Shown here in pieces: positions 13,140 to 54,150 of a DNA stretch of 64,000 nucleotides. The notes under the pieces are model-generated. The model had not been told where the DNA came from. It saw only the letters and a list, made by a program, of their open reading frames with translations, and did no database searches. A program made the translations under genes and the position numbers. How positions within the stretch are numbered: position 1 is the first letter of the stretch; each line of letters opens with the position of its first letter. The DNA lies in the IMG/VR virus record IMGVR_UViG_3300025141_000016, positions 233,105 to 297,104 of that record; one strand, 5' to 3'.

Positions 13140-13589
13140 ATGTCCAAGACCCTTACTGGATCTGACCGTAAACGCCTCATCCGCCTTGCTTCTACCCTCC
13201 CCACGGGGTCAGATGAGCGGAAGGCTATCCTTGCTGGGCTTCACCATGTCGCCGTCCACAAGACCGCCTCCAAGAAGACCACCCTCTCGGCAGATTTGAA
13301 GTTGAAGGACGGGACCGTGTACGCGAAGGGATCGCGTGCAGAGGTGTTCTTCTCGGAGCGCAACCCCTCCATGTCCGAGGTGGAGATTGAGGGTAGGAAG
13401 ATCAAACTCCGCACGGTCAGTCTCCACAAGTACCTCCGTGGTTTTCCAAAGCCCCCCTCCACGAGAGCCTTGCAGAAGATGGACAGTGAGGCTTCCGGGC
13501 CAACGGTCAGTGGGGTACGCAACGTCGAGATGGACGGCTATGGTCCCGATGGGTCACCCTCGTGGATGCTGGCCATGGGGCTCATCTGA
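13140..13589 (+). CDS. Tag-A protein, unknown cargo domain
   Basis: N-terminal LIRLASTLPTGSDERKAILAGL, then KTAS. Confidence 0.75.
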   Translation: MSKTLTGSDRKRLIRLASTLPTGSDERKAILAGLHHVAVHKTASKKTTLSADLKLKDGTVYAKGSRAEVFFSERNPSMSEVEIEGRKIKLRTVSLHKYLRGFPKPPSTRALQKMDSEASGPTVSGVRNVEMDGYGPDGSPSWMLAMGLI

Positions 13590-13621
13590 CCCTGTGCGCC
13601 TCGGTGGTCGCTCCGTGAAGG

Positions 13622-13636
13622 GGGTCAACCACCTAC
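13622..13636 (+). promoter_or_regulatory. Class I motif, degenerate
   Basis: GGGTCA-accac-CTAC, before 13670. Confidence 0.35.
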
Positions 13637-13669
13637 CGAATGTCCGTAGAGGGCACAACGGAGAATGGT

Positions 13670-14125
13670 ATGAGCGCATCCCCCCAGAAAGTAGCCGAGC
13701 GGTGGGCCTCCGAAGCCAAGTTCTTCCGTGGCCTCCACAGTCGCAACAAGGGCATCTTCTTTCGTGGGGCCAAGAACCCCGGTGCCGGTGGCGGGGCTGG
13801 CTTTGGTGCTCTGGGACGTGGCCTTTATCTCGCGTGGGACAAGGGGATCGCCCAGTTCTTTGCTGACCGAGCCGGGGGTCAGGTATACGCCTACAAGATT
13901 CCGTCCAGCCTCAAACTGCTCGATGCCCAGAGCAGCGAGATGGCGACGATCAAGGAAGGGATGGGATTCAAGCCCTGGCAGTATTCAGACGATCCCATGT
14001 ACGCCGCTGTCGTCACAGCCGAGGTAAAAGACCTTGGATACGACGGGGTGATCTCCGACAAAGCGGCAGATGGCCTTGTCTTGTTCGATCCCCGTAAAGC
14101 GAAGCTGGTGGACCTACCGGAGTGA
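13670..14125 (+). CDS. Tag-B protein with ADP-ribosyltransferase-like domain
   Basis: FFRG..LGRGLYLA..AQFFA..GYDGVI..VLFDP; N-terminal SPQKVAERW. Confidence 0.65.
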   Translation: MSASPQKVAERWASEAKFFRGLHSRNKGIFFRGAKNPGAGGGAGFGALGRGLYLAWDKGIAQFFADRAGGQVYAYKIPSSLKLLDAQSSEMATIKEGMGFKPWQYSDDPMYAAVVTAEVKDLGYDGVISDKAADGLVLFDPRKAKLVDLPE

Positions 14126-15280
14126 TGCAGCGACGGCGTAGGACTCGCCGGGAGCCTCGTCCAGAAGCCCCTGCTCACAGAGGTATGCGATTGCGCGGCG
14201 GGTGTCGGCAGCGTCGAGCCGGAGGTCTGACTGGATTTCCTCGCGGGTTGACCATGGCTCATCGGCCACGAGCCGCAGGATGCGTTCGGCGTTTCCAACG
14301 GTGACTGGACCGTCACGAAGAGACTTGCGAACTCGTCCGGCAAGGTGGGCTGCTCGGAGGGTGGAGACACCTTCGCTGGCAGCGATCTCATCGCGGGTAG
14401 CCCCAGCGATCAAAGCGTCGTAGACCCGCTGATAACGCTCGGCGGCTCCTCGGTGGGCAGCACGGACGAGAGCACGACCGCCTGTGGTCTGGATTGTGTC
14501 TTCGTCGGTGAGGATGAGCATATCTTCCGGGCTCGGGCTCCGAGAGATGATCACCTCATGGAGATCATCCTCGTCTCCCTCGTAGGCGACTTCCCACTCG
14601 GTCCCCTGGTTGGCCCGCTGGCAAACGTACTCGGGGGATTCTGTCTCGACGCGAACTCGGATCTCGTGCTGGGTCCGTGCCCCACGCATCCGAGCGAGGG
14701 GTTCTGCGCCTCGGACGAAGACGCTGGAGAAGTGCTTGCGCTTCAGAAACTTGTAGAGCGTGGAGAGCGATACGGTGCCTTTCTCGGCCAGTGCCTTGTC
14801 GAAGGTGCCACCTGCGGCCCATTTGGCGATCCAGAGCCCCGTCAACGAGAGACATTCGGCGTAGTCTTCGGAGGGGTAGTCGCGGGAGAGCAGCGCGGCG
14901 AGTCGGCGGTCCAGGGCGCGGTCGCGCAGTTGGGCTTCCAGCCATTCTGATGAGGTCAGCGGTGCGGCTTCATCGACCAGGGAGGAGAGGTGGGTCGTCA
15001 CCGTCTCGTGGTCGTCTGACCGGAGGTGGGAGAGCAGCCCAGCCGCGTCACCCTGGAGAGCAGACCAGAGGTCAGCGCAGAGGAGGGCTTGTGAGCCGGT
15101 GCCCCGGTAGCCGTTCTGGTTCACGGAGTCGCGTCGAACGATACTCCGTTTGCGGGCCGTGGCTTTGGCGAGGTCGGTGATCCCGGCTGCGACCAGCGAT
15201 TCAACTTCGCTGGGAGTCTGGGGGGAAGCACCGTGGATGAGATCGAGCAGGGAGAGCAGGTATGAGAGTCGTCGGGTCAT
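14114..15280 (-). CDS. Sigma-like / HTH transcription factor with C-terminal winged helix
   Basis: SPEDML..GATRDEIAASEGVS..RVRKSLR (region 4-like), then RILRLV..TREEI..LCEQGLL (wHTH). Confidence 0.55.
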   Translation of the reverse strand: MTRRLSYLLSLLDLIHGASPQTPSEVESLVAAGITDLAKATARKRSIVRRDSVNQNGYRGTGSQALLCADLWSALQGDAAGLLSHLRSDDHETVTTHLSSLVDEAAPLTSSEWLEAQLRDRALDRRLAALLSRDYPSEDYAECLSLTGLWIAKWAAGGTFDKALAEKGTVSLSTLYKFLKRKHFSSVFVRGAEPLARMRGARTQHEIRVRVETESPEYVCQRANQGTEWEVAYEGDEDDLHEVIISRSPSPEDMLILTDEDTIQTTGGRALVRAAHRGAAERYQRVYDALIAGATRDEIAASEGVSTLRAAHLAGRVRKSLRDGPVTVGNAERILRLVADEPWSTREEIQSDLRLDAADTRRAIAYLCEQGLLDEAPGESYAVAASLR

Positions 15281-15521
15281 GGGATTCCTTGGAGTTCCGA
15301 TGCCAGCAAGCTGGACAGGATGGGTGAGTGGTTTTTGGTCGAGGACGGGGACGGTGCTCTTACCGAGCGGGTCAAGGTCTGCGACTTCTCAACATCCTAT
15401 CCGCCGTGACCCTATGGGTCAACCCCACCTTGGCCATCAAGTGGATCGAAGTGGGCCAGATGCGGCCCCGTGCCCCATGCTTATTTTTTGGCGGGGGGAT
15501 CACCCCTGATCAGGGTGGTGT

Positions 15522-15536
15522 CGGTAGGTCGTCTAT
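15522..15536 (+). promoter_or_regulatory. Class I motif
   Basis: CGGTAG-gtcgt-CTAT, before 15581. Confidence 0.75.
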
Positions 15537-15580
15537 CTGGGTAGTGGGGGTAGAAGAGAAGTCCCTTTGGAGAGATCCCC

Positions 15581-17017
15581 ATGAATCGCTACGCTGCCGC
15601 TTTGGTTCGTTTGGCGGTATCCCTGCCGTCAGGGAGCCGTGACCGCCGAGTGATCCTTGCTTTGATCAAAGAGGCGGGAGCCCGTGAGGATTTTCTGGCT
15701 CGCTACGAGTTCCTTGGGGGGCTCACCGGCAAGTCGGGTGATCGGGTCAAGAGTGATCTGAAGCAGGGCGACTACGAGCCGTATGTGAAGGCACTTGCCG
15801 CTAATGGCTGGGACGAGGGCACCGCACAGCGCCCCGGAGAGGCCCTTACGTTCGTTGACCCCACGGCCAACATGGGGCTGTGGACGGCTTTGGTGAGGGG
15901 CGGAAACTCGGCCTTGGGCCGTGCCGTGGACGAGGTGGCCAAGTGGCAACCTGCCCTGTCAGGAATCTCTGGTGAGGATGTTGCCCAGGTACTCTCACAC
16001 GGGGGTCAACACTGGCCTGGGATGCGCTTCGACTCTCGCGTGAAGAATGAGAAAGGTGGCTTTGGTGATTATGTCGAGCGCGTGAGCGGCGAGGAGCCCT
16101 ACGCGACTGGAGACAACATCTTCCGGTCTGTCGGGAAGGAACTGAAGTCCAAGAAGTTCAACCTCGCTTTCATTATCAAGAGGTTGATGGGGATTGCCCG
16201 CAACAAGACGAAGGATTGGGTCCGCTCGGTGGATGCCGGGAAGTGGGAGGGACCATTCCCCGAAACCGAGGAAGGCCAGCAGATTGTCCCGAGGGGATAC
16301 ACACCCCCGGACCCTGCTGACATGCTCACCAAGGAGTTGTATCTGAAAGCCATCGATCCCGTGATGAAGCGGGTGTTGGCTGATGCCCCTGCACAGGCTC
16401 GGATTTGGGAGGCTCTGTTGGCTTCCGTCCAGGCCAACAAGAACTTTCTTGGGGTATCCGCGAGAGGAAAGGGGGAGGGTGATGTGACCCTGGAGGGCAC
16501 GAAGTTCCGTCCCTTCATGGAGAAGTATTTTGAGGGGCAGACGGATGAAGACGACAACCCCATCCGAATCCCCACCACCCAGAAGATCGCCGCAAACTTC
16601 CAGAAACTCCTGAAGAAGATGAGGGCTGCGTTGGCGGGTCTTTCCGACGCAGAGTTGGCCAAGGGGCTCCCGAGACAAGACCGTGAGATCCTGAAAGACC
16701 GTGACATAGCGAGTGTCTACTGGTCGGAGGTCCATCGTCGCCGTCGGGCTTTGCTCATTCGTATGGCTTCCACGTTCCCCGTGGGGTCAGAACACCGCAA
16801 GGTGTTGCTCCGGCAGGCATCGGATGTGGGGGCGAAGGACGTGTTGACCGAGAAATCGCTCATCAAGTATTTGAAGGCGACGGGGGATACTGTCTCGGCT
16901 TCAACGCTGGCCTACGGCTTTGGGGGCAACCCCCAGCAACACACGAAGTTCCTTCAGCGGCTTGTGGCCAAGGGTGTGCTTGATAAGGACGGCAAAGAGT
17001 ACAGCCTCGCCCTCTGA
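15581..17017 (+). CDS. Tag-A polyprotein: ECF-sigma-like domain + winged-helix domain
   Basis: Two tag-A copies; GEDVAQ and LMGIARNKTKDWVR resemble ECF region 2; C-terminal wHTH LQRLVAKGVL..YSL. Confidence 0.5.
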   Translation: MNRYAAALVRLAVSLPSGSRDRRVILALIKEAGAREDFLARYEFLGGLTGKSGDRVKSDLKQGDYEPYVKALAANGWDEGTAQRPGEALTFVDPTANMGLWTALVRGGNSALGRAVDEVAKWQPALSGISGEDVAQVLSHGGQHWPGMRFDSRVKNEKGGFGDYVERVSGEEPYATGDNIFRSVGKELKSKKFNLAFIIKRLMGIARNKTKDWVRSVDAGKWEGPFPETEEGQQIVPRGYTPPDPADMLTKELYLKAIDPVMKRVLADAPAQARIWEALLASVQANKNFLGVSARGKGEGDVTLEGTKFRPFMEKYFEGQTDEDDNPIRIPTTQKIAANFQKLLKKMRAALAGLSDAELAKGLPRQDREILKDRDIASVYWSEVHRRRRALLIRMASTFPVGSEHRKVLLRQASDVGAKDVLTEKSLIKYLKATGDTVSASTLAYGFGGNPQQHTKFLQRLVAKGVLDKDGKEYSLAL

Positions 17018-17057
17018 CCTTCCCGTGGGTAGGGTGGGGGAGCCAGGAGCCCTGTGT

Positions 17058-17438
17058 ATGCCCACCTACGAATACCGCTGCGATGCCTGTGAGGAGCACT
17101 TTGAAAAGCTGCTCCCGATAGCACGCTACCGAGAACCCCAAGATTGTCCGGCGTGTGGGCACACCCCCGCTACGAAGTTGGTTTCGGGAGGATCAGGATT
17201 TATCCTGCGGGGTGATGGATGGGCTGGGAAGAACAACCGGGTCCGGGGTCAGATGAGAGCGAAGAATCGTCGTCTGGATGCGGCCCAAGCTGAACGAGGC
17301 CAAGACGCGGGGGGCAAGCTGGCCCCGAATGTTGAGGGCGAGAGGGTGGGGTCATGGAGCGAGGCAACCAAACTGGCGAGGTCCAAGGGCAAGGACACCT
17401 CTGGCTACGAGGCGCGGGCGCGGAAGGAAAAGAAGTGA
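17058..17438 (+). CDS. FmdB-family zinc-ribbon protein
   Basis: MPTYEYRCDAC..CPACG..FILRGDGW. Confidence 0.85.
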   Translation: MPTYEYRCDACEEHFEKLLPIARYREPQDCPACGHTPATKLVSGGSGFILRGDGWAGKNNRVRGQMRAKNRRLDAAQAERGQDAGGKLAPNVEGERVGSWSEATKLARSKGKDTSGYEARARKEKK

Positions 17439-17650: not shown

Positions 17651-17659
17651 GTCGCCTAT
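17645..17659 (+). promoter_or_regulatory. Class I motif, variant
   Basis: CAATAG-gtcgc-CTAT, before 17687. Confidence 0.6.
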
Positions 17660-33364: not shown

Positions 33365-33772
33365 ATGACTGATGCCCTGATTTCCCAACTATTCGACTTT
33401 GGCAGTCTCGGGCTGTTTGCTGCGTTCCTTGTCTATCAGCATCTCGGGATGCAGAGGCGGCTCGATGGGCTGACCTCTGGTTTCCAGGCCCAGTTGAAAG
33501 AGATCGAGAAAGCCCATGAGGGTCGTATCGAGATCATGCGTGGTCGATATGATGTGGTGATGGATCGGGTGAGGGCAGAGGGGGCGGCGGCTCTCCAGCA
33601 CTGTATGGCCCAGCGAGATGAACTCATCGCCAAACTCGGGGAGCAGGTTGATGGGGTCGCCAAGAAGATGGATGCCTCGATGTTCAAGCAAGAGGTGGCC
33701 CTCGCAAAGATCGAGGAGGCATTGGACGAGATTCGGCGCGAGCGGGAGCGGCGTTGCTTCAGAGATCGGTAG
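33365..33772 (+). CDS. Holin-like membrane protein (N-terminal TM + coiled coil)
   Basis: FGSLGLFAAFLVY TM segment, then coiled coil; class I promoter. Confidence 0.5.
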   Translation: MTDALISQLFDFGSLGLFAAFLVYQHLGMQRRLDGLTSGFQAQLKEIEKAHEGRIEIMRGRYDVVMDRVRAEGAAALQHCMAQRDELIAKLGEQVDGVAKKMDASMFKQEVALAKIEEALDEIRRERERRCFRDR

Positions 33773-33781
33773 TTCCCCTAT
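33767..33781 (+). promoter_or_regulatory. Class I motif
   Basis: CGGTAG-ttccc-CTAT, before 33819. Confidence 0.75.
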
Positions 33782-33818: not shown

Positions 33819-35057
33819 ATGGCTACCCCTACTGACCGACAACTCCTCATCCGTGTGGCCTCCACTCTCCCTGTGGGGTCAGAAGCACGTCGCGTGATCC
33901 TGGCTGGGTGCGAGAAGCTGAAGGTTCCCGCGATGCGCGAGAACTGCGAGAAGTCCAAAGAGGACGGTGTTCAACCCGGTAAGGGCAAGTCGAAGTCAAA
34001 GTCGAAGGGTGACGACAAGATGCCAGCCGAGTTGCTGGAGAAGTTCAAGGCCAAGAAGAAGGCCAAGACCGCTCGGCTGATGAAGCGGCAAGAGAAGATC
34101 CTTCGCCAGTACCTCGACTCCGCATCGAGTCCAGCGATGGACTACGACGGCCTACCCCCGCAGGTTCAGAGTGCTTTGAGGCGCGTCAAGAACCAAGAAA
34201 CCCTGCACAGTGACGTGGAACGCTGGCTCGGGGACAACGCCCAACGCTCGATGTGGGCTTCCAACCGACCAGCTTTGATTCGCCTCGCTTCCAGTCTTCC
34301 TGCTGGGTCAGATGAGCGTAGGGTCATCCTCGCAAGGATCCAGAAAGAGGCCCGAGGTGGATGGGATGAGGTCATTTCCGGTGACCTCATGCGTGCTCGC
34401 TTCGGTGGTCAGAGGGTGATGATCGAGGAGATGCCGGGGAAACCCGTCAAGCGCAAGGTCCGTCGCATCACATTTTCGACGGAGTGGGTGATGCGTGGTG
34501 GGTGGTTCCGCCCCGACGGCCCTTTCCTGATGAGCAACATCTGGAATGATGCCGGTATCACCAAGAACATGACCTATGACCGAGCAGTGGCGGCGATGAG
34601 AGGGGCTATCGAGGAGGTGGGCACCAAGGCACTGAAAGAGGCAGCCAAACTCTCCAAGAAGTATCCGGGCAACTACATGACCCCTGCCGAGATGCAGGCG
34701 CAGTTGGATAAGGTCAAGTGGCCCAAAAACTTCCTCGGGAACGAGGAAGTTGTGTCGTTCTTGGAGGTCGAGCCGCAAGACTATTCCCCGATTTCTTTCA
34801 AGGGAAAGGACTTCGCGGGAACATCGAGATGGGATGAGTTCACGTTCTACGACGAGGCAGACAAGGACGACTACATGGCCCAGATGGAAGGGATGCGGGC
34901 GTTCTACAAGTCTACGTCGAAGGGTGCCGCCCGTAAGCTGTTCAAGCTGCTGAAGGCTGACCCCGACGTGGTTCGGAACATGGACAACGGGGACTTCCTG
35001 TTGTGGCTCGGCAAGAACAAGGTCAGCCACCGATACGTCCCCACCGTCTGGCGCTGA
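33819..35057 (+). CDS. Tag-A polyprotein (two tags, unknown cargo domains)
   Basis: LIRVASTLPVGSEARRVILAG and LIRLASSLPAGSDERRVILAR; KTAR and KEAR linkers. Confidence 0.75.
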   Translation: MATPTDRQLLIRVASTLPVGSEARRVILAGCEKLKVPAMRENCEKSKEDGVQPGKGKSKSKSKGDDKMPAELLEKFKAKKKAKTARLMKRQEKILRQYLDSASSPAMDYDGLPPQVQSALRRVKNQETLHSDVERWLGDNAQRSMWASNRPALIRLASSLPAGSDERRVILARIQKEARGGWDEVISGDLMRARFGGQRVMIEEMPGKPVKRKVRRITFSTEWVMRGGWFRPDGPFLMSNIWNDAGITKNMTYDRAVAAMRGAIEEVGTKALKEAAKLSKKYPGNYMTPAEMQAQLDKVKWPKNFLGNEEVVSFLEVEPQDYSPISFKGKDFAGTSRWDEFTFYDEADKDDYMAQMEGMRAFYKSTSKGAARKLFKLLKADPDVVRNMDNGDFLLWLGKNKVSHRYVPTVWR

Positions 35058-40060: not shown

Positions 40061-40075
40061 CGGTAGCTCCTCTAT
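40061..40075 (+). promoter_or_regulatory. Class I motif
   Basis: CGGTAG-ctcct-CTAT, before 40107. Confidence 0.75.
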
Positions 40076-41819: not shown

Positions 41820-42244
41820 TGACCTACCGTTATTCGTGAAGCGAGGGAGAGGAGCGGTCGCTCCCCCATGAACATCCCCATCCTCCGGGCTTTGACGAGG
41901 AAGACATTGTGGTTGACGAAGAACTGAAAAAGGAAGCCTCCCAAGATCGCCGGATCCTCATCCGTCTCGCCTCCACTCTCCCTGCGGGAGATGGGATGCG
42001 CCGAGCCATCCTGGCTGGGCTCCGACGGAGAGCCGCCAAGGAACCTTGGAAGCACTGGGGGAAGACGCAAAAGGAGATGCTTGGGATAGCCAAGGCCGAG
42101 ATGAAGCGGCTCAATGTCAGGAGCCCAGATGATCTCCGCAAGGCGCGAAAGAAGCATAAGCCCAGTCTCCCGTCCGATGGGTCCAGCGGTCAATATGACG
42201 CTTGGACCGAAACGCTCGCACAGGTCTTGGAGATGGAGGAATGA
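41819..42244 (+). pseudogene. Tag-A gene interrupted by an in-frame TGA at codon 7 (or starting at GTG 41909)
   Basis: TGATG-coupled ATG 41819 is in frame with ORF 41909..42244; single TGA at 41837-41839. Confidence 0.5.
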
Positions 42245-43386: not shown

Positions 43387-43401
43387 CGGTAGGCCGCCTA
43401 T
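43387..43401 (+). promoter_or_regulatory. Class I motif
   Basis: CGGTAG-gccgc-CTAT, before 43448. Confidence 0.75.
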
Positions 43402-46623: not shown

Positions 46624-46638
46624 CGGTAAGTCTCCTAT
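46624..46638 (+). promoter_or_regulatory. Class I motif
   Basis: CGGTAA-gtctc-CTAT, before 46680. Confidence 0.75.
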
Positions 46639-46679: not shown

Positions 46680-47000
46680 ATGACTGAACCTACTCGCCGG
46701 ATGCTGATCCGATTTGCGTCCACCCTTCCTGTGGGATCAGACGAACGTCGGACCATCCTCGCTGGACTGGACAAGCAGGGTTCCGTGGAGTCCTTTGAGA
46801 AGGAACTCGCCATACAGTTACGTTTGCATACGGGCTTGGGTCCAAAGGATCAGATGGGCCTGAAGGGTCGCACCGTGTGGCTTGCCGATGGAAAGGGTGA
46901 GGTACTGATCTACGATACGACTGCCCGTGGGACGGTGCTCAACTACAAGGGCAAGGAATACAAGTCGGTAAGGGACTTGATGAAGTCCCTTTCTCGGTAG
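46680..47000 (+). CDS. Small tag-A protein
   Basis: LIRFASTLPVGSDERRTILAGL, then KQGS. Confidence 0.75.
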   Translation: MTEPTRRMLIRFASTLPVGSDERRTILAGLDKQGSVESFEKELAIQLRLHTGLGPKDQMGLKGRTVWLADGKGEVLIYDTTARGTVLNYKGKEYKSVRDLMKSLSR

Positions 47001-47009
47001 GCCGCCTAT
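46995..47009 (+). promoter_or_regulatory. Class I motif
   Basis: CGGTAG-gccgc-CTAT, before the sheath gene at 47117. Confidence 0.75.
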
Positions 47010-47116: not shown

Positions 47117-50100
47117 ATGGCTTTTCCCGGCTCCGTTTACGCACCTCCCGGTGTCTACACCCAGACTCTTTACGAAGACCCCATCCAGGGCCTCGCCGCC
47201 TCCGTTCGGCTACCCCTCATCATCGGTACAGGTTCCGAGGAACTGTTCCAGACTGCCCTGGAGTTGATCCGAGGCTCCTCCTCCTCTGTTGACCAGCGCG
47301 TCGTACAGGAAGATGAGACGGGTCGCGCAGTTGTCAGCGTCAGCGACACAGGTGTCGTGACCCTGGGCAACTTCGACGGTGACCTCACACGGTTGCAGGT
47401 GAAGAACTACCCCATCGTGAGCGGGCAGGGCACTGGCACTACCGCGACCGACGCGGCTTCGGTCAACGTGACCCTCAATGGAGCCCCGATTGTGGTCCTC
47501 GCCATTGACGGAGCCACTGGCATCTTGACCCTCTCCGTGACCCCAGAGTCCACGGACGAAGTGAAGGTGACCTACTACTTCAACAGGACCGACACCCTCA
47601 TCACCGACACCCTGTCGGACCAGATCAGCCCAGATGCCCCCGAAATCTTCGGTGCCTTGGGCGAGAACTATGTCGTCACCGCAGACGTGAATGACACCCT
47701 GGAGTTCACGGTTGACTCCGAGGACACCGTGAGTGTCACCATCACCGCTTCCCCGGTCACTGGTTGGACGGCGGCACAGGTGGCGACGTTCATCAATGCA
47801 GAGGCAACGGGCACGACCCTCATCGCTTCGACTACCGTTGACAACTTCGGCAACACTGTCCTCCACCTCACCGCAGATCGCGACATTGTGGTTGAGGACG
47901 GCACTTGCAACACCACTCTGGGCCTCACGTCTGCCTACGACACCGCTCGCAACAAGGTCTTCTACACCTTCCAGAGCCCCATCGTAGATGGAAGCGACGG
48001 CGGCGTGACCACAACTGACCCCGCTGATGTGACGGTCAAGGTCGGTGGTACGCAGGTCATCCCGACGGCTGTTGACGGCCAGACGGGTGCTATCACCCTT
48101 CCCTTCGCCCCTGAAACCGGGACAACGGTCACCTGCCAGTATTACTTCAACTCCTGGCAGGACACCTTCGATTATCTCGCGCATCGCGGGATCACCGACA
48201 TTACGCTCTGCGGCCTCACCCCTGACCGTAGCGACTACATCGACGGTGCAGACTTCATCCTGAAGGACGACAAGATCCTGTGGGGCACGAGCACCCTGAC
48301 GGCAGCGGGAACCAACACCGCTGGGTCTACCTACTTTGACGACACCCAGATCAGCACATCGCTGGTGGACACGCGGCAGTATCTCGCAGCGTGCGCGGCT
48401 GTCGTAGACACTTCGGTCACCCCTCCGGTCGAGAACCGCAAGGACTTCACCCTTCCGCTCCAGCCCACTACGGGTAACGGTCGCGACACCCCGCTTGGGG
48501 CCTCGACCTATGCCGAGGTGGCCAACGGTCGTCTGGACCTCCCGACGGATCGTCCTGACCTCGTGTACGCCTACTGGGGATACACCGTCGAGGATGCTCT
48601 CAACCGAGGGCGCGTCGAGGTGACCAAGGTGGATTCGGCCACGAGCCAGATCACCCTGCGTGAGTCGGTTCCTGTGGGAGCCAGCGTCTACGCGACGTTC
48701 TATTACAACACCCTTGTAGACGGGGACTACACCCTGACCAGCGTCACCGCTGGTGCGAGTGGTGTGGGAACCTACTCCATCATGGACGAGAACAGCGTTT
48801 CTCTCCTGACCCCCCAGTTCGGAGCCAAGTCGGCTCTCCTGGCTACGGTCACCGTGGAGTTCCCTTCCGGTTCGGAGCGCACTCCTGATTGCCGCTTTGA
48901 GCCTCCGTTCACGACCACTTCCTTCACAGGTGCGGTCGAGGAGGACGTGACCATCGAGTTCGCGGTGCAGGACGCAACCCTCGCCAAGTACGCGGTGGCA
49001 TCGGCTGGACCGTACTACCCAGTCACCGGAGCGAGCGACAACCTCCTCATCACCCTCGACGGGACTGATCGGACCATCGATCTCAACAACCCGGCACGCA
49101 CGGGGGCAACGCCAGCGTTCGCCAATCCCAAGGGCTTCCGGGCTTCCGTTGTCGGAGACGAGATCGTCTACGACGCGGCGGGCTTCGCCACGGGCACCAT
49201 CACGGTTGGCGGTACTCCCGTAGCGACTACCGCTACCCTGCTCATTGATGGTGTTACGCTCACCGAGCAAGGTGCCACTGGATGGGTCAACGACGCCACC
49301 GTTGACCTAACCGCCACAGCTATTGCTACGGCTATCAATACCTTCGTGACCACAGTGAGTGCGGTCGCCATCGGAAGTGTTGTACACATCACGGCAGCTA
49401 CGGCGGGTACGGCAGGCAACGCCATCGCCACCTCGTCACCGTCTGGTGATCCGGCATTTACGTTCTCGGCTGCCACCCTGGCTGGCGGGACCGTTCTCGG
49501 AACGGCGCTGGCGATCACTGCGGCTACCAATGCCATCGACATGGAACTTGACGGTGGTCTGGGGTCAGCGAAGCTGGTCCAGGCACAGGTCAACGCGGGT
49601 GCAGGCCAGAAAGCCGAGCACATCGTCGCGGCCATCAACCGTGCTGCCCATGGTGAGTTCGGAGCAGCCCTCGGTGGAGGAGCCGCGACCATCATCCTGG
49701 CGGCAGATGCCTCGGACGTAGACGACTACTACGTCGATTGGGAAATCAAGGTCACGGCTGGTCTTGCCGCTGGTGAGAAGAACACCATTACTGCCTACAA
49801 CGGTACGACGAAGGTTGCGACCGTTACAGCTTGGGCTGGTGGTGCCCCGGTCATCACTGACACCTACTATGTCTACGATCCCGACACCTGCCCGAGCATG
49901 ACGGGTGCGACTCGGTTCCTCAATGCCGTTACCATTGGTACGGGCGGCTTTGACGACATTATCCTGTCGTATGTGGGTGCAATCTCTGGTGTGACTGCCA
50001 TCACTACGGCTGCTGTGCCTATCGCGGCGGCTACCTACAACACGGTGGCTGATCTCGTTACCGCTGCCCAGACTGCCATGGACGCAGCCATCACGGCAGC

Positions 50101-52606
50101 GGGCTTCGCAGCGGACACCCTGGAGATCGACGTAAGTGCGGACACCAGTGGTCGGCTTGTCCTGACCATGAAACAGGCACCAGTTGATACCACAGGTGCC
50201 ACGCTGGAAGTCGTGAACAACGCGACTCCCGCCGATGACTTCATGGTTCTGGCGGGTTTCGATGCTGATGCAGTAGGAAACGACCAGACGATTCTGGTGA
50301 GTGGTCCTATCGCTACGGAGATCACCAACCTCACGGCAACCACGACGGGCGTGACCCCATACGACCGGATCTGGATCAGGAACCGTATCTGTCCGGGCAA
50401 CGCCCAGACGGCGACTCACCTGACCGATTCCGAGTTCTGTTTGAGTCAGTGTCAGTTGAAGATGCTGGGCGGAACCGGTGCTGGATTCGCGGGCCTGACG
50501 GCCAACGAGCAGGGCTACGCTGGGATCACCGGCACCATGCAGGCACCCACCCTCTTTGGTGAGGTTGGTCTGGCTGGTGGGCAGGACGCATCTGATGATG
50601 TGGTGGTCGAGTTGTTCGCGGACGGTGGAACGACCGATCAGAACAACATCTTCAAGATGACCTTTGAGGGTGAGCCCATCACCATCGAGTTCACTGACGG
50701 CGCTGGAGCGGCGATTGCTGCTGGCGGTTCGGCTGATGTTCCTCTGGGACCGCTCACTGACGCGAACAGTATCCTCGGCCAGATCGACGCTGCCATGACG
50801 ACTGCGGGAGTCACTGGCACCGTTGCCCAGGAAGGGTGCGGTATCCGTTTCCGTGGTGGGAGCACGGCTGCTGCCGCTTCCATCGTGATCGGAGATGCGA
50901 ACGCCAACGACGTTCTCGGATTCACCGAGGGCGATGTGGCCTACCGGACTGTTGTTGAGACTGAAGTGGTCGTATCCGCCATGATGGCGGCTTTCGACAA
51001 CTGGACGAACGTCGGTGGTATCGCCAAGACGGTCAACGACGAGGCCAACGCCAAGTACCTGTTCATCGAGAGCATGGGTACGGCAGGGCTCGGGACGCTT
51101 TCCTCTGTGGCCTTTGACGACGCGGCTACGGATTCCGCACTCCGTCCGGGTGTTGGGCTCGGTGTGGCTGTGGGAGACGGTAACGCGGGAGAGGCGGCCA
51201 TCGACGGCTTCTTCGTCACTTCGACGGATACCGTCAATGGTTCGGGAACGGCGAACACCTCCATTCTCAACGCTGGCACGGGCCAGGATGGAAATGTGGG
51301 TGAAACCTACCGTGATCTCGTCACTGGGTTCACAGTCTCCGTCCTTCCACGGGCTGGTGGCGGCTCCTACCCCACTGGTGGAACCATCACCTTCACGGTC
51401 AGGGAGAATGTGACCACCGACAGCAACCTGCCGGTGAACACGATTCCTGGCCTGGAACTGACGGTCAGCAACACGTCCGGGGTTGTCGCCGGAGATACGG
51501 CGGTTGTCTCTACCTACGAAAAGGGTGGAAATCAGCCGAGCGTTGGGGATGTGTACTACGTCTCCTACGACTACGCGAAGCAGGATTTCAGTGCTGCGCT
51601 GTTCACCAAGTTGTCCTCCATTCAGGCGGCCTACGGGGCGAACAGTCCGAATAACCCTGTCTCGTTGGCATCGTACTTTGCGGTCCTCAACGGTGCTGTT
51701 CTCCTCTCGGTCAAGCAGGTCCAGAAGGACACTGACTCGACGGGAGATGGGGCTTACGACACAGCCAGTGAAACCGCCTTCATCGCGGCCATTGACGACG
51801 TGGAAGGAACGCTTCCGGGCGGTCTGTACCCCGACATGTTGGTGCCCTTGAAGGGAGATAGCCTGACTCTGTTCCAGTATGTCGCCATGCACTGTGACAT
51901 TCAGTCGAGCATCCGCTACCGCGCAGAGCGTACCGCTATCTGCGGATACGGTGCCGGTACGCAGCCTCGGGACGCGGGAACCATCGCGCAGGCGGTGGGT
52001 CGTTCTCGGTTGCGCCTCATGTACCCGGACATCGCCACGTTGAGCCTTTCTCGGGCTGACGGGACGACCGACTCCTACCTTGTGGATGGCACCTACCTCG
52101 CCGCTGCATGGTCTGGAAATCGGGCTTCCCCGAACATCGACGTTGCTACTCCGTGGACGCGGGGACGCATCTTCGGGTTCGATGAACTCGCTCGGACGCT
52201 CGATGCGGTTCAGCAGAATCAGGTCGCTGTGCGCGGTGTGACGATCTTTGGCCAGCGCCAGAGCATCATCGAGTGCCGTCATGGTCTGACCACTGACATG
52301 ACCAACGTGTTGACGAAGACCCCGACCGTGGTGACCATCGCGGATGAGGTTCAGCGTCAGGCGCGGGCGACTCTCGACAAGTTCATTGGAACGAAGTTCC
52401 TGCCGAGTGTCACGGGTCAGATCGAGGGGCAGTTGGCCAACACCTTGAAGAAGCTGGTCCAGGCATCCATCATCAACGCCTTCACGGGAGTTTCTGCGGC
52501 AGTGTCAGCAGATGACCCCACGGTGGCGGAAGTGGAAGCCTACTACCAGCCCATCTTCCCGCTGCTCTACATCGTCGTGACCTTCAATCTGCGAAGCACA
52601 CTGTAG
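47117..52606 (+). CDS. Contractile tail sheath protein with large insertions
   Basis: N-terminal YAPPGVY; C-terminal sheath domain ending YQPIFPLLYIVVTF; 1829 aa. Confidence 0.88.
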   Translation: MAFPGSVYAPPGVYTQTLYEDPIQGLAASVRLPLIIGTGSEELFQTALELIRGSSSSVDQRVVQEDETGRAVVSVSDTGVVTLGNFDGDLTRLQVKNYPIVSGQGTGTTATDAASVNVTLNGAPIVVLAIDGATGILTLSVTPESTDEVKVTYYFNRTDTLITDTLSDQISPDAPEIFGALGENYVVTADVNDTLEFTVDSEDTVSVTITASPVTGWTAAQVATFINAEATGTTLIASTTVDNFGNTVLHLTADRDIVVEDGTCNTTLGLTSAYDTARNKVFYTFQSPIVDGSDGGVTTTDPADVTVKVGGTQVIPTAVDGQTGAITLPFAPETGTTVTCQYYFNSWQDTFDYLAHRGITDITLCGLTPDRSDYIDGADFILKDDKILWGTSTLTAAGTNTAGSTYFDDTQISTSLVDTRQYLAACAAVVDTSVTPPVENRKDFTLPLQPTTGNGRDTPLGASTYAEVANGRLDLPTDRPDLVYAYWGYTVEDALNRGRVEVTKVDSATSQITLRESVPVGASVYATFYYNTLVDGDYTLTSVTAGASGVGTYSIMDENSVSLLTPQFGAKSALLATVTVEFPSGSERTPDCRFEPPFTTTSFTGAVEEDVTIEFAVQDATLAKYAVASAGPYYPVTGASDNLLITLDGTDRTIDLNNPARTGATPAFANPKGFRASVVGDEIVYDAAGFATGTITVGGTPVATTATLLIDGVTLTEQGATGWVNDATVDLTATAIATAINTFVTTVSAVAIGSVVHITAATAGTAGNAIATSSPSGDPAFTFSAATLAGGTVLGTALAITAATNAIDMELDGGLGSAKLVQAQVNAGAGQKAEHIVAAINRAAHGEFGAALGGGAATIILAADASDVDDYYVDWEIKVTAGLAAGEKNTITAYNGTTKVATVTAWAGGAPVITDTYYVYDPDTCPSMTGATRFLNAVTIGTGGFDDIILSYVGAISGVTAITTAAVPIAAATYNTVADLVTAAQTAMDAAITAAGFAADTLEIDVSADTSGRLVLTMKQAPVDTTGATLEVVNNATPADDFMVLAGFDADAVGNDQTILVSGPIATEITNLTATTTGVTPYDRIWIRNRICPGNAQTATHLTDSEFCLSQCQLKMLGGTGAGFAGLTANEQGYAGITGTMQAPTLFGEVGLAGGQDASDDVVVELFADGGTTDQNNIFKMTFEGEPITIEFTDGAGAAIAAGGSADVPLGPLTDANSILGQIDAAMTTAGVTGTVAQEGCGIRFRGGSTAAAASIVIGDANANDVLGFTEGDVAYRTVVETEVVVSAMMAAFDNWTNVGGIAKTVNDEANAKYLFIESMGTAGLGTLSSVAFDDAATDSALRPGVGLGVAVGDGNAGEAAIDGFFVTSTDTVNGSGTANTSILNAGTGQDGNVGETYRDLVTGFTVSVLPRAGGGSYPTGGTITFTVRENVTTDSNLPVNTIPGLELTVSNTSGVVAGDTAVVSTYEKGGNQPSVGDVYYVSYDYAKQDFSAALFTKLSSIQAAYGANSPNNPVSLASYFAVLNGAVLLSVKQVQKDTDSTGDGAYDTASETAFIAAIDDVEGTLPGGLYPDMLVPLKGDSLTLFQYVAMHCDIQSSIRYRAERTAICGYGAGTQPRDAGTIAQAVGRSRLRLMYPDIATLSLSRADGTTDSYLVDGTYLAAAWSGNRASPNIDVATPWTRGRIFGFDELARTLDAVQQNQVAVRGVTIFGQRQSIIECRHGLTTDMTNVLTKTPTVVTIADEVQRQARATLDKFIGTKFLPSVTGQIEGQLANTLKKLVQASIINAFTGVSAAVSADDPTVAEVEAYYQPIFPLLYIVVTFNLRSTL

Positions 52607-52625
52607 GGTCAACCCAGCAGGCAAA

Positions 52626-52666
52626 CCGAGTGCCCCTTCCCGTAAGTGTCGGGAAGGGGCTCTCGG
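52626..52666 (+). terminator. GC-rich stem-loop after the sheath gene
   Basis: CCGAG-T-GCCCCTTCCCG / CGGGAAGGGGC-T-CTCGG; no U-tract. Confidence 0.55.
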
Positions 52667-52678
52667 TAGGTCGCCTAT
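52664..52678 (+). promoter_or_regulatory. Class I motif
   Basis: CGGTAG-gtcgc-CTAT, before 52720. Confidence 0.75.
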
Positions 52679-52719
52679 CTACCGCCCGTAGGTGACACAC
52701 CTTTGGCCGGAGACTCTAT

Positions 52720-54150
52720 ATGCCTACCTTCACCTCTGATGATCGCAAGATTCTGGTCCGGTACGCCTCGACGCTGCCCTCCGGGTCGCCGGAGCGGAAG
52801 GCTGTTTTGGCGGGTCTTTCCCTGACTGGTTCCGGTTCCGGTGCTGCAAACGCGAAGTATCTGGACAGCCTGCCCTCTGGCACGAAGGCCAAGATTCTGA
52901 AGAACGTGGCCAAGCATTATGGTGTCTCCGTCTCCGAGATCGAGGACGAACTGACAGATCGGGATGCAGAAGCCCTGTATGAGTACATCGCAAACGACAA
53001 TGCCTTGCGGATGCAGGTTTACCGCGACTTCAAGCAGCAGCGGTTGGCTGCAAGCAAGAACGCTGCCGGATACGCCCGTAAGTCCATGCGTGGGGGAGAC
53101 TACGGAGGGGCTGGGAGCAGCAAGCAGTTGGTGAAGGACATGATTGCCAACATGCGACGGGTGAAGACCAACGCTGAACGAAGCCATGCCGTTGAGCAGG
53201 TGCAGCACGCGGAAGCTGCGAAGTCCATCACCTCCCAACAGGCCAAAGAGGTCATGGGAGCCATTGGTAAGACCGCATCGGCCCGTACCGCCGAGGACTG
53301 GATGGAAGACGCGGTGAAGCGCCCTGGTCGCCTTCACAAGTTCTTCGGTATCCCCGAGGACGAGACGATCCCCATGTCGAAGATCGACGGTGAGATCGCC
53401 AAGTTGAAGAAGAAAGACGACCGCACGAAGGACGAGGAGTCCCTGCTCGATGCCCTCAACCTGGGCAAGACCTTCAAGGAAATGAAGAAGTCGGCTGCGG
53501 GAGAGGAACACTACATCGGGGACGAGGAAGCGGGGGTGTACTGGAGCGTCGATGAAACCCCTCGCGGATGGTTCGTCCAGGCTTGGGTGGATGGTGGTCA
53601 CTTCACACATGACTTCCCGAAGGATGGTCCTTACCCCACCGAAGGGGAAGCCATGGAAGCTGGATGGTCACAAGGGCTTGAATGGGTGGTGACCAACGAT
53701 GTGAGCCTTGCGGGCGAACCCAAGACCTTCCCCGCCTGGGCTCGCAGGAACAGATGGCAGCCTCGCACAGCCTCCTCCGATGATCGCATCGCTCTCATCC
53801 GCTACGCCTCTACCCTTCCTGTGGGGTCAGATGAGCGCAAAGCCATCCTGTCGGGGTTGAAGACTGCTGCCCTTGATTCCGTGTCTCTCGGTGAGATGAT
53901 GGTGTCGGCGGCAGCCCAGGCTCGGCTGTTCTATCGCCTTGACATGAAGCGGTTTGTGGGTGTGTACGAGGAAGTGGGTCAGAATCTTATCCGAATCGGG
54001 CATACCTCTGACCCCGATGACCGTGCGTTCCTTGTCAGCGAGGTCGATAAGGGGCTGGCCGATTTGAAGAAGCACAACATCACCGCTATGTCGGAGGCGT
54101 TGGAGCACATGACCCGTGCCTACGCACTCGTTTCCAAAGCGTATCGCTGA
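52720..54150 (+). CDS. Tag-A polyprotein with about five small modules
   Basis: Two tag-A copies; RLAA, KTAS-ARTA, KSAA, RTAS, KTAA linkers. Confidence 0.75.
   Translation: MPTFTSDDRKILVRYASTLPSGSPERKAVLAGLSLTGSGSGAANAKYLDSLPSGTKAKILKNVAKHYGVSVSEIEDELTDRDAEALYEYIANDNALRMQVYRDFKQQRLAASKNAAGYARKSMRGGDYGGAGSSKQLVKDMIANMRRVKTNAERSHAVEQVQHAEAAKSITSQQAKEVMGAIGKTASARTAEDWMEDAVKRPGRLHKFFGIPEDETIPMSKIDGEIAKLKKKDDRTKDEESLLDALNLGKTFKEMKKSAAGEEHYIGDEEAGVYWSVDETPRGWFVQAWVDGGHFTHDFPKDGPYPTEGEAMEAGWSQGLEWVVTNDVSLAGEPKTFPAWARRNRWQPRTASSDDRIALIRYASTLPVGSDERKAILSGLKTAALDSVSLGEMMVSAAAQARLFYRLDMKRFVGVYEEVGQNLIRIGHTSDPDDRAFLVSEVDKGLADLKKHNITAMSEALEHMTRAYALVSKAYR

What the first reader, a model, noticed from the sequence alone, without database searches (positions are those of the whole stretch)
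13164..53859. Tag A: 22-aa motif LIRLASTLPxGSxERRAILAGL, nine copies in six proteins
Approximate copy positions: 13164-13241, 15602-15667, 16751-16810, 33834-33911, 34275-34340, 41945-42022, 46704-46769, 52741-52818 and 53779-53859. The pattern fits helix-turn(PxGS)-helix. Most copies are followed within about ten residues by KTA, KEA, RQA, RRA or KQG, then an unrelated domain. Five of the six proteins start with it, and three have a second internal copy before a further domain. I do not recognise it as a named family.
Basis: seen in the sequence. Interest (0 to 1): 0.9.

Follow-up and report, generated by a model that had tools for sequence, protein, structure and literature searches.

The report
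Portable helix-turn-helix tag, huge phages
A conserved ~34-residue helix-turn-helix peptide is attached to many unrelated proteins of an uncultivated huge phage and its relatives; it most likely directs them into the virus particle, so the packaged proteins might be readable from sequence alone.

Summary
All nine copies are on the + strand in six ORFs. A profile of them finds exactly nine hits in the six-frame translation (E about 1e-10 or lower); the next best is E about 0.1. Third codon positions are near saturation, so selection acts on the protein. The unit is really about 34 residues: (M-x3-4)-LTASDRsALIRLASTLPxGSxERkAILAGLxKxA. AlphaFold2 models all four tested copies as helix-loop(LPxGS)-helix.

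It matches nothing in Pfam, PHROGs, NCBIfam or PDB sequences, and nothing in 50,697 GenBank phage records or the literature searched. It does match 1,501 protein clusters (50% identity) from metagenomes. These sit on contigs of huge phages whose sheath and capsid proteins resemble phage G, Tunturi_5 and LR745208.

In the 150 best clusters the tag is N-terminal 131 times, internal 74 times and C-terminal 32 times, joined to more than 100 unrelated sequence families. Tagged genes carry a phage-specific promoter-like motif that they share with the tail sheath and endolysin genes. Several lie inside virion modules. In one relative, a small protein with a tag at each end is encoded directly after the major capsid gene.

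Best reading, about 0.5 confidence: a docking tag that loads cargo into the virion, probably the capsid interior. The binding partner is unknown and no proteomic evidence exists.

The parts
13140..13589 (+). Tagged ORF 1, 149 aa: N-terminal tag, then 112 aa of unknown cargo.
   Evidence: Exact sequence is present in metagenome protein clusters.
13155..13250 (+). Tag copy 1 (32-column profile span).
13092..13106 (+). Promoter-like motif CGGTAGCTTCTTTAT, 33 nt before the ATG of ORF 1.
15581..17017 (+). Tagged ORF 2, 478 aa: tag, 352-aa domain (family F1), tag, 62 aa. Its orthologue in relatives is fused to further tagged modules (P0011/P0154, 691 aa).
15581..15676 (+). Tag copy 2, the most divergent copy (LVRLAVSLPSGSRDRRVILALI).
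16733..16828 (+). Tag copy 3 (internal).
15522..15536 (+). Promoter-like motif, 44 nt before the ATG of ORF 2.
33819..35057 (+). Tagged ORF 3, 412 aa: tag, Cys motif CEKL..MRENCEK plus a Lys-rich helical stretch, tag, 235-aa domain.
33825..33920 (+). Tag copy 4.
34254..34349 (+). Tag copy 5 (internal). AlphaFold2 pLDDT 93-96, helix-loop-helix.
33767..33781 (+). Promoter-like motif, 37 nt before the ATG of ORF 3.
41909..42244 (+). Tagged ORF 4, 111 aa, GTG start. Its stop overlaps (ATGA) the start of a ferritin/Dps-like gene at 42241-43386.
41936..42031 (+). Tag copy 6 (GD in place of GS).
40061..40075 (+). Promoter-like motif before the gene that starts at about 40107. Tagged ORF 4 follows that gene without a motif of its own.
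46680..47000 (+). Tagged ORF 5, 106 aa, inserted between a Tunturi_5 gp325-like gene and the tail sheath gene. Its 73-aa cargo also occurs inside the multi-tag proteins P0012 and P0013.
46683..46778 (+). Tag copy 7.
46624..46638 (+). Promoter-like motif, 41 nt before the ATG of ORF 5.
52720..54150 (+). Tagged ORF 6, 476 aa, directly after the sheath gene: tag, 315 aa including a fusellovirus VP2-like domain (aa 192-257), tag, 93 aa.
52732..52827 (+). Tag copy 8.
53773..53868 (+). Tag copy 9 (internal).
52664..52678 (+). Promoter-like motif, 41 nt before the ATG of ORF 6.
46995..47009 (+). The same promoter-like motif before the tail sheath gene (47117-52606). Together with the sites at 43387 (tail-terminator-like gene) and 44672 (endolysin), it is the basis for calling the motif a virion/lysis-class promoter.

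Best explanation
Tag A is a self-contained, ~34-residue helix-turn-helix docking module. It works at the N-terminus, internally or at the C-terminus. A clade of uncultivated huge phages related to phage G attaches it to many unrelated proteins. I propose that it loads those proteins into the assembling virion, most probably the capsid interior, so that they travel with the DNA into the next host.

Proposed mechanism (inferred):
- The two amphipathic helices expose a conserved hydrophobic face together with R10, E21, R22 and K/R23.
- This surface binds a repeated site in the procapsid. The site could be on the coat protein's inner surface or on a scaffold/core protein.
- Proteins with two or three tags act as scaffold-like hubs. 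In the window these are 15581, 33819 and 52720; in relatives they include the tag-F1-tag-F0-tag family and a 201-aa protein with a tag at each end, encoded next to the capsid gene.
- Single-tag proteins ride along as cargo.
- Release could occur by prohead-protease cleavage. The conserved S19-x-E21 at the start of helix 2 resembles the S/A/G-x-E sites of other giant-phage head proteases. This step is pure speculation.

Shown here: the tag's existence, portability, predicted fold, phage restriction, selection at the protein level, a shared promoter-like motif, and its gene neighbourhoods.

Inferred: virion incorporation, the binding partner, and cleavage.
For: 1. Portability.
- The profile hits 1,501 clusters among 1.84 billion representatives.
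- In the best 150, tags are N-terminal 131 times, internal 74 times and C-terminal 32 times.
- N-terminal tags begin 4-5 residues after the Met.
- Flanking segments form 125 families, 102 of them singletons.
- Fusion and fission occur at tag boundaries. Homologues of the 15581 and 33819 proteins are joined in P0011/P0154 at the syntenic locus, and the 46680 cargo sits inside P0012/P0013.

2. Cargo swap with the tag kept. In a Tara relative, the slot after the sheath gene holds a 169-aa tagged protein whose cargo is unrelated to that of window ORF 52720 (E = 1.7).

3. Fold. All four modelled tags are helix-loop-helix. A 30-residue helix-turn-helix is what anchors the P22 scaffolding protein to the inner procapsid surface (PMC9965877).

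4. Co-regulation with virion and lysis genes.
- CGGTAR-N5-YTAT occurs 13 times in the window, all on the + strand, against 0.06 expected.
- Twelve sites lie 24-46 nt before a start codon; the sheath site lies 107 nt before it.
- The motif precedes 5 of the 6 tagged genes, the sheath, a tail-terminator-like gene and the endolysin.
- No site lies just upstream of the RecD, RecA, SbcC-like, clamp-loader or primase-like genes.
- In the window and four relatives together, 12 of 15 tagged genes carry it against 20 of 115 untagged genes. Gene counts are approximate; Fisher p = 2e-6.

5. Position in virion modules.
- Tagged genes flank the sheath gene (46680, 52720).
- P0249 precedes a homologue of Tunturi_5 gp322, annotated 'minor tail protein'.
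- In 80 capsid-gene loci, tag hits occur in 5 distinct phages. In 4 of them the tagged gene lies within 3 kb downstream of the capsid gene on the same strand.
- One of these (L123:11196-11801) is a 201-aa K/E-rich protein with a tag at each end. The gene order there is protease, a 249-aa gene, capsid gene, tagged protein.
- That protein is homologous to the C-terminal module of hub protein P0012, whose F1 domain matches window ORF 15581.
- The capsid protein is only ~290 aa with no delta domain, so a separate scaffold is expected (inference).

6. Cargo types. Most have no known family. The few that do include the following:
- an Alt-like / exoenzyme-type ADP-ribosyltransferase;
- pentapeptide repeats;
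- VP2-like and ParB-like DNA binders;
- a WGR domain.
T4 Alt and the T4 internal proteins are packaged through a short targeting sequence and injected, and those loci vary in cargo while keeping the tag (PMC9026906).

7. Restriction to phages.
- Only 1 true hit in 185,579 species-representative genomes, on a 15.5-kb MAG contig.
- None in GenBank phages.
Against: - No virion proteome, structure or genetics exists for any phage that carries the tag. Every link to the particle is by gene position, shared promoter motif or analogy.
- Three window genes (13140, 15581, 33819) lie among replication and recombination genes, not structural ones.
- The time at which the promoter-like motif acts is inferred only from the sheath, terminator-like and lysin genes. 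It also precedes five genes of unknown function.
- The capsid protein is 87-94% identical across the 80 best-matching loci, yet some of those loci carry other tag types. This argues against the coat protein itself being the receptor.
- Tag-only products exist: a 35-aa ORF in L030 and an 87-aa tag-tag protein, P0058. They have no obvious use as cargo.
- The capsid locus of this phage itself was not retrieved.
- The overall AlphaFold2 models are poor (pTM 0.25 and 0.42), and three of the four tags have pLDDT of about 40-79.
Confidence: 0.5

Rival explanations
1. The tag is a general association module. Tags bind each other or a non-virion hub, and gather tagged proteins into an intracellular assembly such as a replication factory, a compartment or a condensate. 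They are not packaged.
For: - Multi-tag proteins and tag-only products look like cross-linkers.
- More than 100 cargo families share one tag.
- Three window genes sit among replication genes.
- Relatives encode actin-like (Volactin) proteins near tagged genes.
- Sister lineages use a coiled-coil-like N-terminal tag, RTASEV..L..RVARLE, which suggests helix-helix co-assembly.
Against: - The tagged genes share their promoter-like motif with the sheath and lysin genes, and the recognised replication genes lack it.
- Tagged genes are embedded in tail and head modules, and a doubly tagged protein is encoded directly after the capsid gene.
- Tag-tag association would not exclude packaging: it could be how cargo joins a scaffold core.
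Confidence: 0.17
2. The tag loads cargo onto or into the contractile tail rather than the head. The comparison is with the N-terminal packing signals of extracellular contractile injection systems, or with a surface decoration of the unusually large sheath.
For: - Tagged genes lie directly on both sides of the 1,829-aa sheath gene, and the position after the sheath is conserved in a marine relative.
- P0249 precedes a minor-tail-protein homologue.
- The comparison with contractile-injection-system packing signals is from my own knowledge and was not checked here.
Against: - In a phage the tube lumen is normally occupied by the tape measure protein (general knowledge).
- Tagged proteins also lie next to the capsid gene and protease in relatives.
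- Cargo with DNA-binding or ADP-ribosyltransferase domains fits head-packaged, injected proteins better.
Confidence: 0.12
3. The tag is a leader or recognition sequence for a protease or exporter. One version is a double-glycine-type leader cut by the C39-like peptidase encoded next to tagged ORF 6. Another is simply a prohead-protease recognition element in polyproteins.
For: - A Peptidase_C39_2 domain protein (54150-55403, E = 2.3e-8) follows tagged ORF 6. It is also found after the post-sheath tagged gene in the Tara relative, one 80-aa ORF further on.
- A27-G28 preceded by I25 and E21 partly resembles a double-glycine leader.
- Domain-tag-domain layouts and fission at tags resemble polyproteins.
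Against: - G28 is present in only 77% of N-terminal, 66% of internal and 19% of C-terminal tags.
- Tags also sit at the extreme C-terminus, and cargo reaches more than 400 aa.
- The C39-like protein shows no ABC-transporter domain. It lies in the tail module and may be a tail lysin.
- 34 conserved residues with a defined fold is far more than a cleavage site needs.
Confidence: 0.08
4. The tag is a minimal DNA-binding helix-turn-helix that tethers proteins to phage DNA.
For: - Helix-turn-helix shape with invariant Arg residues and net positive charge.
- Several cargos bind DNA (VP2-like, ParB-like, WGR).
Against: - A Pro in the turn and an LPxGS loop are unlike classical DNA-binding helix-turn-helix turns (my own knowledge).
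- No Pfam helix-turn-helix family is hit even at E <= 1.
- A two-helix unit without a third stabilising helix is unlikely to bind DNA specifically.
- Cargo that already binds DNA would not need it.
Confidence: 0.06

Closest known systems
T4 capsid targeting sequence (CTS) of internal proteins IPI-III and Alt
   Same: - A short shared peptide on otherwise unrelated, fast-evolving, often small and basic proteins.
- Cargo varies between relatives while the tag is kept.
- One cargo class is an Alt-like ADP-ribosyltransferase.
- The CTS targets proteins to the scaffold core before DNA packaging (PMC9026906).
   Different: - The CTS is about 10 residues, strictly N-terminal, and removed at an L/I-x-E site by gp21.
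- Tag A is about 34 residues with a predicted helix-turn-helix fold.
- Tag A also occurs internally and at C-termini, often 2-3 times per protein.
- No cleavage is shown for Tag A.
C-terminal helix-turn-helix of the P22 scaffolding protein (gp8 residues 271-300), also used to load foreign cargo into P22 particles
   Same: - A ~30-residue U-shaped helix-turn-helix, which in P22 docks on the inner procapsid surface, one per coat subunit (PMC9965877). For Tag A only the size and shape are established; docking is my hypothesis.
- It works as a transplantable cargo-loading handle (PMC9962691, title and abstract only).
- The hub family carries Tag A at its extreme C-terminus, and a doubly tagged member lies next to the capsid gene.
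   Different: - No sequence similarity (hhalign probability 0.2%).
- In P22 only the scaffold has the motif. Here many different proteins carry it (at least seven in this genome, seven ORFs within 20 kb of a relative).
- Binding to coat protein is untested for Tag A.
Encapsulin cargo-loading peptides and microcompartment encapsulation peptides
   Same: Short portable peptides, at either terminus or between domains and joined by poorly conserved linkers, that load varied cargo into a protein shell. Encapsulin shells have the HK97 capsid fold. This comparison is from my own knowledge.
   Different: - Those peptides are shorter: a ~10-residue extended peptide or a single ~18-residue amphipathic helix.
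- They are unrelated in sequence to Tag A and belong to cellular compartments.
- Tag A is a two-helix unit found in phages only.
Double-glycine leader peptides cut by C39 peptidases
   Same: - A conserved N-terminal leader on many variable products.
- A C39-like domain gene lies beside one tagged gene.
- There is a partial E(-8), I(-4), A-G pattern.
   Different: - Internal and C-terminal copies exist, and cargo is large.
- The Gly is not conserved in C-terminal copies.
- No transporter domain is present, and the C39-like gene lies in a tail module.

Membership tests
Any named protein family (Pfam-A, PHROGs v4, NCBIfam 20.0, PDB chains) | A significant profile or sequence match that covers the tag. 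| tested here: not met
   - Pfam: nothing on the tag at E <= 1.
- PHROGs: none on the tag.
- NCBIfam: none at E <= 0.1.
- PDB with the tag profile: best E = 0.4, antibody light chains, which is chance.
T4-type capsid targeting sequence | About 10 residues, at the N-terminus only. | tested here: not met
   The conserved unit is about 34 residues. In 150 representatives, 74 copies are internal and 32 are C-terminal.
T4-type capsid targeting sequence | Followed by a prohead-protease site (L/I-x-E) and removed on maturation. | tested here: inconclusive
   - No L/I-x-E follows the tag.
- A conserved S19-x-E21 lies inside it (S 80-91%, E 72-79%).
- A head maturation protease homologue exists in relatives.
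- There are no cleavage data.
T4-type capsid targeting sequence | Directs cargo into the prohead core. | not testable with these tools
   Needs virion proteomics or a packaging assay.
P22-type scaffolding protein coat-binding domain | A ~30-residue helix-turn-helix. | tested here: met
   AlphaFold2 gives helix-loop-helix at all four tags modelled: residues 4-15/22-28 and up to 159/165-186 in the 33819 protein, and 3-14/20-49 and 365-397/404-413 in the 15581 protein. The best pLDDT is 93-96.
P22-type scaffolding protein coat-binding domain | Sequence homology to gp8 residues ~260-303. | tested here: not met
   hhalign of the tag profile against the P22 gp8 C-terminus: probability 0.2%, one aligned column.
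P22-type scaffolding protein coat-binding domain | Located at the C-terminus of a helical, charged protein encoded beside the capsid gene. | tested here: inconclusive
   - Met in a relative: L123:11196-11801 is a 201-aa K/E-rich protein with a tag at each end, 329 nt after the capsid gene.
- Not seen in the window, which lacks the capsid gene.
P22-type scaffolding protein coat-binding domain | Binds the inner surface of the coat protein shell. | not testable with these tools
   No multimer prediction or experiment was available.
Double-glycine leader / C39 peptidase substrates | N-terminal leader that ends in GG, GA or GS. | tested here: not met
   - The tag has A27-G28-L29.
- G28 is at 77% in N-terminal, 66% in internal and 19% in C-terminal copies.
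- Three of the nine window copies lack it.
Double-glycine leader / C39 peptidase substrates | C39 domain fused to an ABC exporter in the same locus. | tested here: not met
   The neighbouring protein (54150-55403) matches only Peptidase_C39_2 at residues 9-126 and has no transporter domain.
Encapsulin cargo-loading peptide | A short C-terminal peptide on cargo encoded beside an encapsulin shell gene in a cellular genome. | tested here: not met
   - Tags are mostly N-terminal and have two helices.
- They are essentially absent from 185,579 species genomes: one hit, on a short MAG contig.

The most novel reading that the evidence does not exclude
Tag A is the address label for the packaged and injected proteins of a globally distributed clade of huge phages. 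The scaffold-like hub proteins carry the same helix-turn-helix that cargo proteins use to enter the capsid. Sister lineages have swapped in other tags (RTASEV..RVARLE; VIRLAHxxPELRP). If so, the roughly 1,500 tagged protein clusters are a ready-made catalogue of proteins that these phages deliver into cells, nearly all of unknown function.
Probability: 0.4. Interest if true: 0.85.

Novelty: new variant of a known kind. Interest (0 to 1): 0.72.

Why it matters
If the tag is a packaging signal, three things follow.

1. The set of proteins that huge phages carry in the particle and inject could be read directly from sequence. At present this needs purified virions and mass spectrometry, which is impossible for uncultivated phages.
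2. It would flag about 1,500 protein clusters of unknown function as candidate early-acting host-takeover or counter-defence factors.
3. It would provide a compact handle, usable at either end of a protein or internally, for loading foreign proteins into very large capsids.

Even without the functional claim, this is a large undescribed sequence family with a clear modular grammar: promoter motif, tag, then variable cargo.

Tried and rejected
**Rejected**
- A DNA-level repeat or recent duplication. Third codon positions are only 35% identical, and 62% of codons that encode the same residue differ.
- A known domain. Pfam, PHROGs, NCBIfam and PDB sequences give nothing on the tag.

**Led nowhere**
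- Presence in cultured or GenBank phages: tblastn with one copy and with the family consensus gave only chance-level hits at E >= 0.4.
- Cargo function from structure: Foldseek of the 15581 model against PDB and BFVD gave no match at E <= 0.001. The 33819 model was too poor to search.
- Homology to the P22 scaffold helix-turn-helix: none.
- PHROGs and Pfam on genes around P0249, and on most head-module genes of L123.
- The capsid gene is not in the window or the first 44 loci. The capsid locus of this phage's own contig was not among the 80 loci returned.

**Technical dead ends**
- The first DNA pattern had too few fixed bases.
- A homologue search seeded with the divergent tag of ORF 52720 returned only 4 orthologues.

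**Not resolved**
- Which of the 150 representatives carries the ADP-ribosyltransferase domain, because the batch scans report counts only.

Full report
**1. The observation**

They lie in six ORFs: 13140-13589 (149 aa), 15581-17017 (478 aa, two copies), 33819-35057 (412 aa, two copies), 41909-42244 (111 aa), 46680-47000 (106 aa) and 52720-54150 (476 aa, two copies).

A profile built from the nine copies scores them at per-copy E-values of about 1e-10 or lower in the six-frame translation. The next best piece has a per-domain E of 0.11, so there are exactly nine. A degenerate back-translation matches 8 times against 0.00 expected in shuffles.

The copies are conserved as protein, not DNA. Identity is 66% at codon positions 1+2 but 35% at position 3, and 62% of codons that encode the same residue differ. 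This rules out a DNA repeat or a recent duplication.

All six proteins begin with the tag. For 41909 this assumes the GTG start, which is preceded by a Shine-Dalgarno-like GAGGAAG.

**2. Where the window comes from**

The window is the last 64 kb of a 297,104-bp IMG/VR contig.

- The 1,829-aa ORF at 47117-52606 is a giant tail sheath. It is 48% identical to that of the 485-kb uncultured phage LR745208.1 and 33% identical to that of Tunturiibacter phage Tunturi_5.
- The genes before it match Tunturi_5 gp324 (annotated 'tail terminator') and gp325.
- Elsewhere the window encodes a RecD-like helicase, RecA/UvsX, an SbcC-like ATPase, a clamp loader, a primase fragment, an endolysin, a ferritin/Dps-like protein and a C39-like peptidase domain protein.

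**3. The family**

The tag matches nothing in Pfam, PHROGs, NCBIfam or PDB sequences. It matches nothing in 50,697 GenBank phage records, and no text in the paper library.

Against 1.84 billion representative proteins, the 32-column profile finds 1,501 clusters at E <= 1e-3 and 232 at E <= 1e-10.

- All members examined come from metagenomes or MAGs and are unnamed.
- A DNA-pattern scan of IMG/VR finds the tag on at least 12 other viral contigs, some of 180-288 kb.
- A scan of 185,579 species-representative genomes finds one true copy, on a 15.5-kb Terriglobia MAG contig.

The tag therefore appears to be specific to phages.

The conserved unit is about 34 residues: (M-x3-4)-L-T-A-S-D-R-s-A-L-I-R-L-A-S-T-L-P-x-G-S-x-E-R-k-A-I-L-A-G-L-x-K-x-A. 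A12, P16, G18 and R22 are at 96-100%, and R10 is at 87-94%.

**4. Portability**

- In the 150 best clusters the tag is N-terminal 131 times, internal 74 times and C-terminal 32 times. N-terminal copies start almost always 4-5 residues after the Met.
- The 218 segments between or beside tags fall into 125 BLAST families, 102 of them singletons.
- Units are shuffled at tag boundaries. The 691-aa protein P0154 occupies the position of window ORF 15581, upstream of the same RecD and RecA genes. It joins homologues of ORF 15581 and ORF 33819. The 73-aa cargo of ORF 46680 occurs inside P0012 and P0013.
- In a Tara Oceans relative, the slot after the sheath gene again holds a tagged gene, followed after an 80-aa ORF by the C39-like gene. 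Its cargo is unrelated to that of ORF 52720.
- One 20-kb stretch of another relative holds seven tagged ORFs, one of which is only the tag (35 aa).
- The same genome as the window has at least a seventh tagged protein, P0249.

**5. Fold**

AlphaFold2 models of ORF 33819 (mean pLDDT 59.7) and ORF 15581 (66.8) are poor overall. They nevertheless place helix, LPxGS loop, helix at all four tags. pLDDT is 93-96 at the second tag of ORF 33819 and about 40-79 at the other three. The 352-aa domain of ORF 15581 has no structural match in PDB or BFVD.

**6. A shared promoter-like motif**

While reading the upstream regions I found CGGTAR-N5-YTAT. It occurs 13 times in the window, all on the + strand, against 0.06 expected. 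Twelve sites lie 24-46 nt before a start codon; the sheath site lies 107 nt before it.

- It precedes five of the six tagged genes. The sixth follows a gene that has it.
- It also precedes the sheath, the terminator-like gene, the endolysin and five unknown genes.
- No site lies just upstream of the RecD, RecA, SbcC-like, clamp-loader or primase-like genes.
- It is conserved at the same spacing in freshwater and marine relatives.

Over the window and four relatives, 12 of 15 tagged genes have the motif against 20 of 115 untagged genes. Gene counts are approximate; Fisher p = 2e-6. I infer a promoter class for virion and lysis genes, with each tagged gene an independent promoter-tag-cargo cassette. 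The timing is an inference.

**7. Links to the particle**

- Four of the seven tagged genes of this phage lie in or beside tail genes. ORF 46680 lies before the sheath gene and ORF 52720 after it. ORF 41909 lies 1.2 kb before the terminator-like gene. P0249 precedes a homologue of Tunturi_5 gp322, annotated 'minor tail protein'.
- The capsid protein of the clade is a ~290-aa relative of phage G gp27. It has more than 580 close relatives in IMG/VR and no delta domain.
- In the 80 capsid loci returned (933 kb), tag hits occur in five distinct phages. In four of them the tagged gene lies within 3 kb downstream of the capsid gene on the same strand.
- The clearest case is L123. The gene order there is head maturation protease, a 249-aa gene, the capsid gene, then a 201-aa K/E-rich protein with a tag at each end.
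- That protein is homologous to the C-terminal module of hub protein P0012, whose N-terminal domain matches window ORF 15581.
- A charged protein beside the capsid gene, ending in a 30-residue helix-turn-helix, resembles the P22 scaffolding protein. Its C-terminal helix-turn-helix (residues 271-300) docks on each coat subunit inside the procapsid (PMC9965877). There is no sequence homology between the two.

**8. Cargo**

About 95% of the tagged proteins listed have no Pfam domain. The exceptions are:

- fusellovirus VP2-like domains, including window ORF 52720;
- pentapeptide repeats;
- beta-solenoids;
- a WGR domain;
- a ParB-like protein;
- L5 gp82-like proteins;
- one ADP-ribosyltransferase that matches the exoenzyme and Alt-like families.

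T4 Alt and the internal proteins are packaged through a short capsid targeting sequence and injected. [quoted passage not shown]

**9. Interpretation**

The most likely function is a docking tag that loads proteins into the virion, probably the capsid interior, with multi-tag proteins acting as scaffold-like hubs (confidence about 0.5).

The receptor is unknown. The capsid protein is 87-94% identical across the 80 returned loci, yet some of those loci use other N-terminal tags near the capsid gene: RTASEV..L..RVARLE and VIRLAHxxPELRPxLLPLL. For that reason I lean towards a scaffold or core partner, or tag-tag co-assembly, rather than the coat protein itself.

The rivals are:

- a non-virion assembly module (0.17);
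- loading onto or into the tail (0.12);
- a protease or export leader linked to the C39-like gene (0.08);
- DNA binding (0.06).

**10. Novelty**

The sequence family and its grammar are undescribed in the libraries searched. The concept of a capsid targeting or cargo-loading peptide is known. I rate it a new variant of a known kind. What is new is a two-helix tag that works in any position, occurs many times per genome, and defines a very large set of unknown phage proteins.

Noticed in passing
window 5674, 12032, 13092, 15522, 33767, 39260, 40061, 43387, 44672, 46624, 46995, 52664, 56937 (+ strand): Phage-specific promoter-like motif CGGTAR-N5-YTAT. It has 13 sites against 0.06 expected, all on the + strand; twelve lie 24-46 nt before a start codon and the sheath site 107 nt. 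It precedes the sheath, terminator-like and endolysin genes and most tagged genes, and no site lies just upstream of the recognised replication genes. It is conserved in freshwater and marine relatives.
   Followed up: yes
window 47117-52606: Giant tail sheath protein of 1,829 aa. Only its two ends align with ordinary sheaths, so about 800 aa in the middle are extra.
   Followed up: partly
window 42241-43386: Ferritin/Dps-like protein of 381 aa. Its ATG overlaps the stop (ATGA) of tagged ORF 41909-42244, which suggests translational coupling of a tagged small protein with an untagged Dps-like one.
   Followed up: partly
window 54150-55403; L035:10795-12474: A Peptidase_C39_2-like domain protein in the tail module. 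It follows the post-sheath tagged gene both here (directly) and in a Tara Oceans relative (after an 80-aa ORF). It could be a tail lysin or a processing protease.
   Followed up: partly
window 222-2141: A 640-aa protein with an ART-PolyVal ADP-ribosyltransferase domain (polyvalent-protein type). It has no tag.
   Followed up: no
window 33909-33959; relatives P0006, P0008, P0011, P0012, P0020; L123:11196-11801: Directly after some tags comes a Cys pair motif, CEKLPxGPMRxNCEKxKxxG, and Lys-rich stretches. In relatives these are followed by LKKHQFTSEDNPNPKGNDKDGDGKTNEP, which resembles a calcium-binding site, and by YPWDxCI...CGKIRAESQG before a C-terminal tag.
   Followed up: partly
window 52720-54150, residues 192-257: A domain matching the fusellovirus (archaeal virus) virion protein VP2 family (Pfam PF25632, E = 1e-7) in a bacterial huge phage. 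It is also present in tagged relatives.
   Followed up: no
L068, L070, L072, L075, L083 and other capsid loci; L049, L050, L056, L058, L008: Sister lineages with the same capsid protein carry other conserved N-terminal tags on small ORFs near the capsid gene. One is MRR[TS]ASE[VI]..L..R[VI]ARLE, with 20 copies in 10 loci and up to 4 per locus. The other is LRSxVIRLAHxxPELRPxLLPLLK. Neither is in the window.
   Followed up: partly
L030:13058-14071; L036:6519-7523: Relatives encode actin-like proteins (Pfam Volactin) close to tagged genes.
   Followed up: no
L030:8836-8943; P0058: Products made only of tag: a 35-aa ORF with its own promoter motif, and an 87-aa protein made of two tags.
   Followed up: no
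P0021, P0031, P0034, P0035, P0048, P0057, P0061: In 7 of 150 representatives a second conserved block, MEHASEEARKKYLKEHPxADPxKHTV, directly follows the N-terminal tag. It is not present in the window.
   Followed up: no
P0223 (NCBI MAG 'Planctomycetaceae bacterium'); L041 (Terriglobia MAG); Tunturi_5 host Tunturiibacter: Weak host hints: tag-bearing contigs were binned with Planctomycetota and Acidobacteriota, and the nearest cultured relative by sheath and capsid proteins infects an acidobacterium.
   Followed up: no
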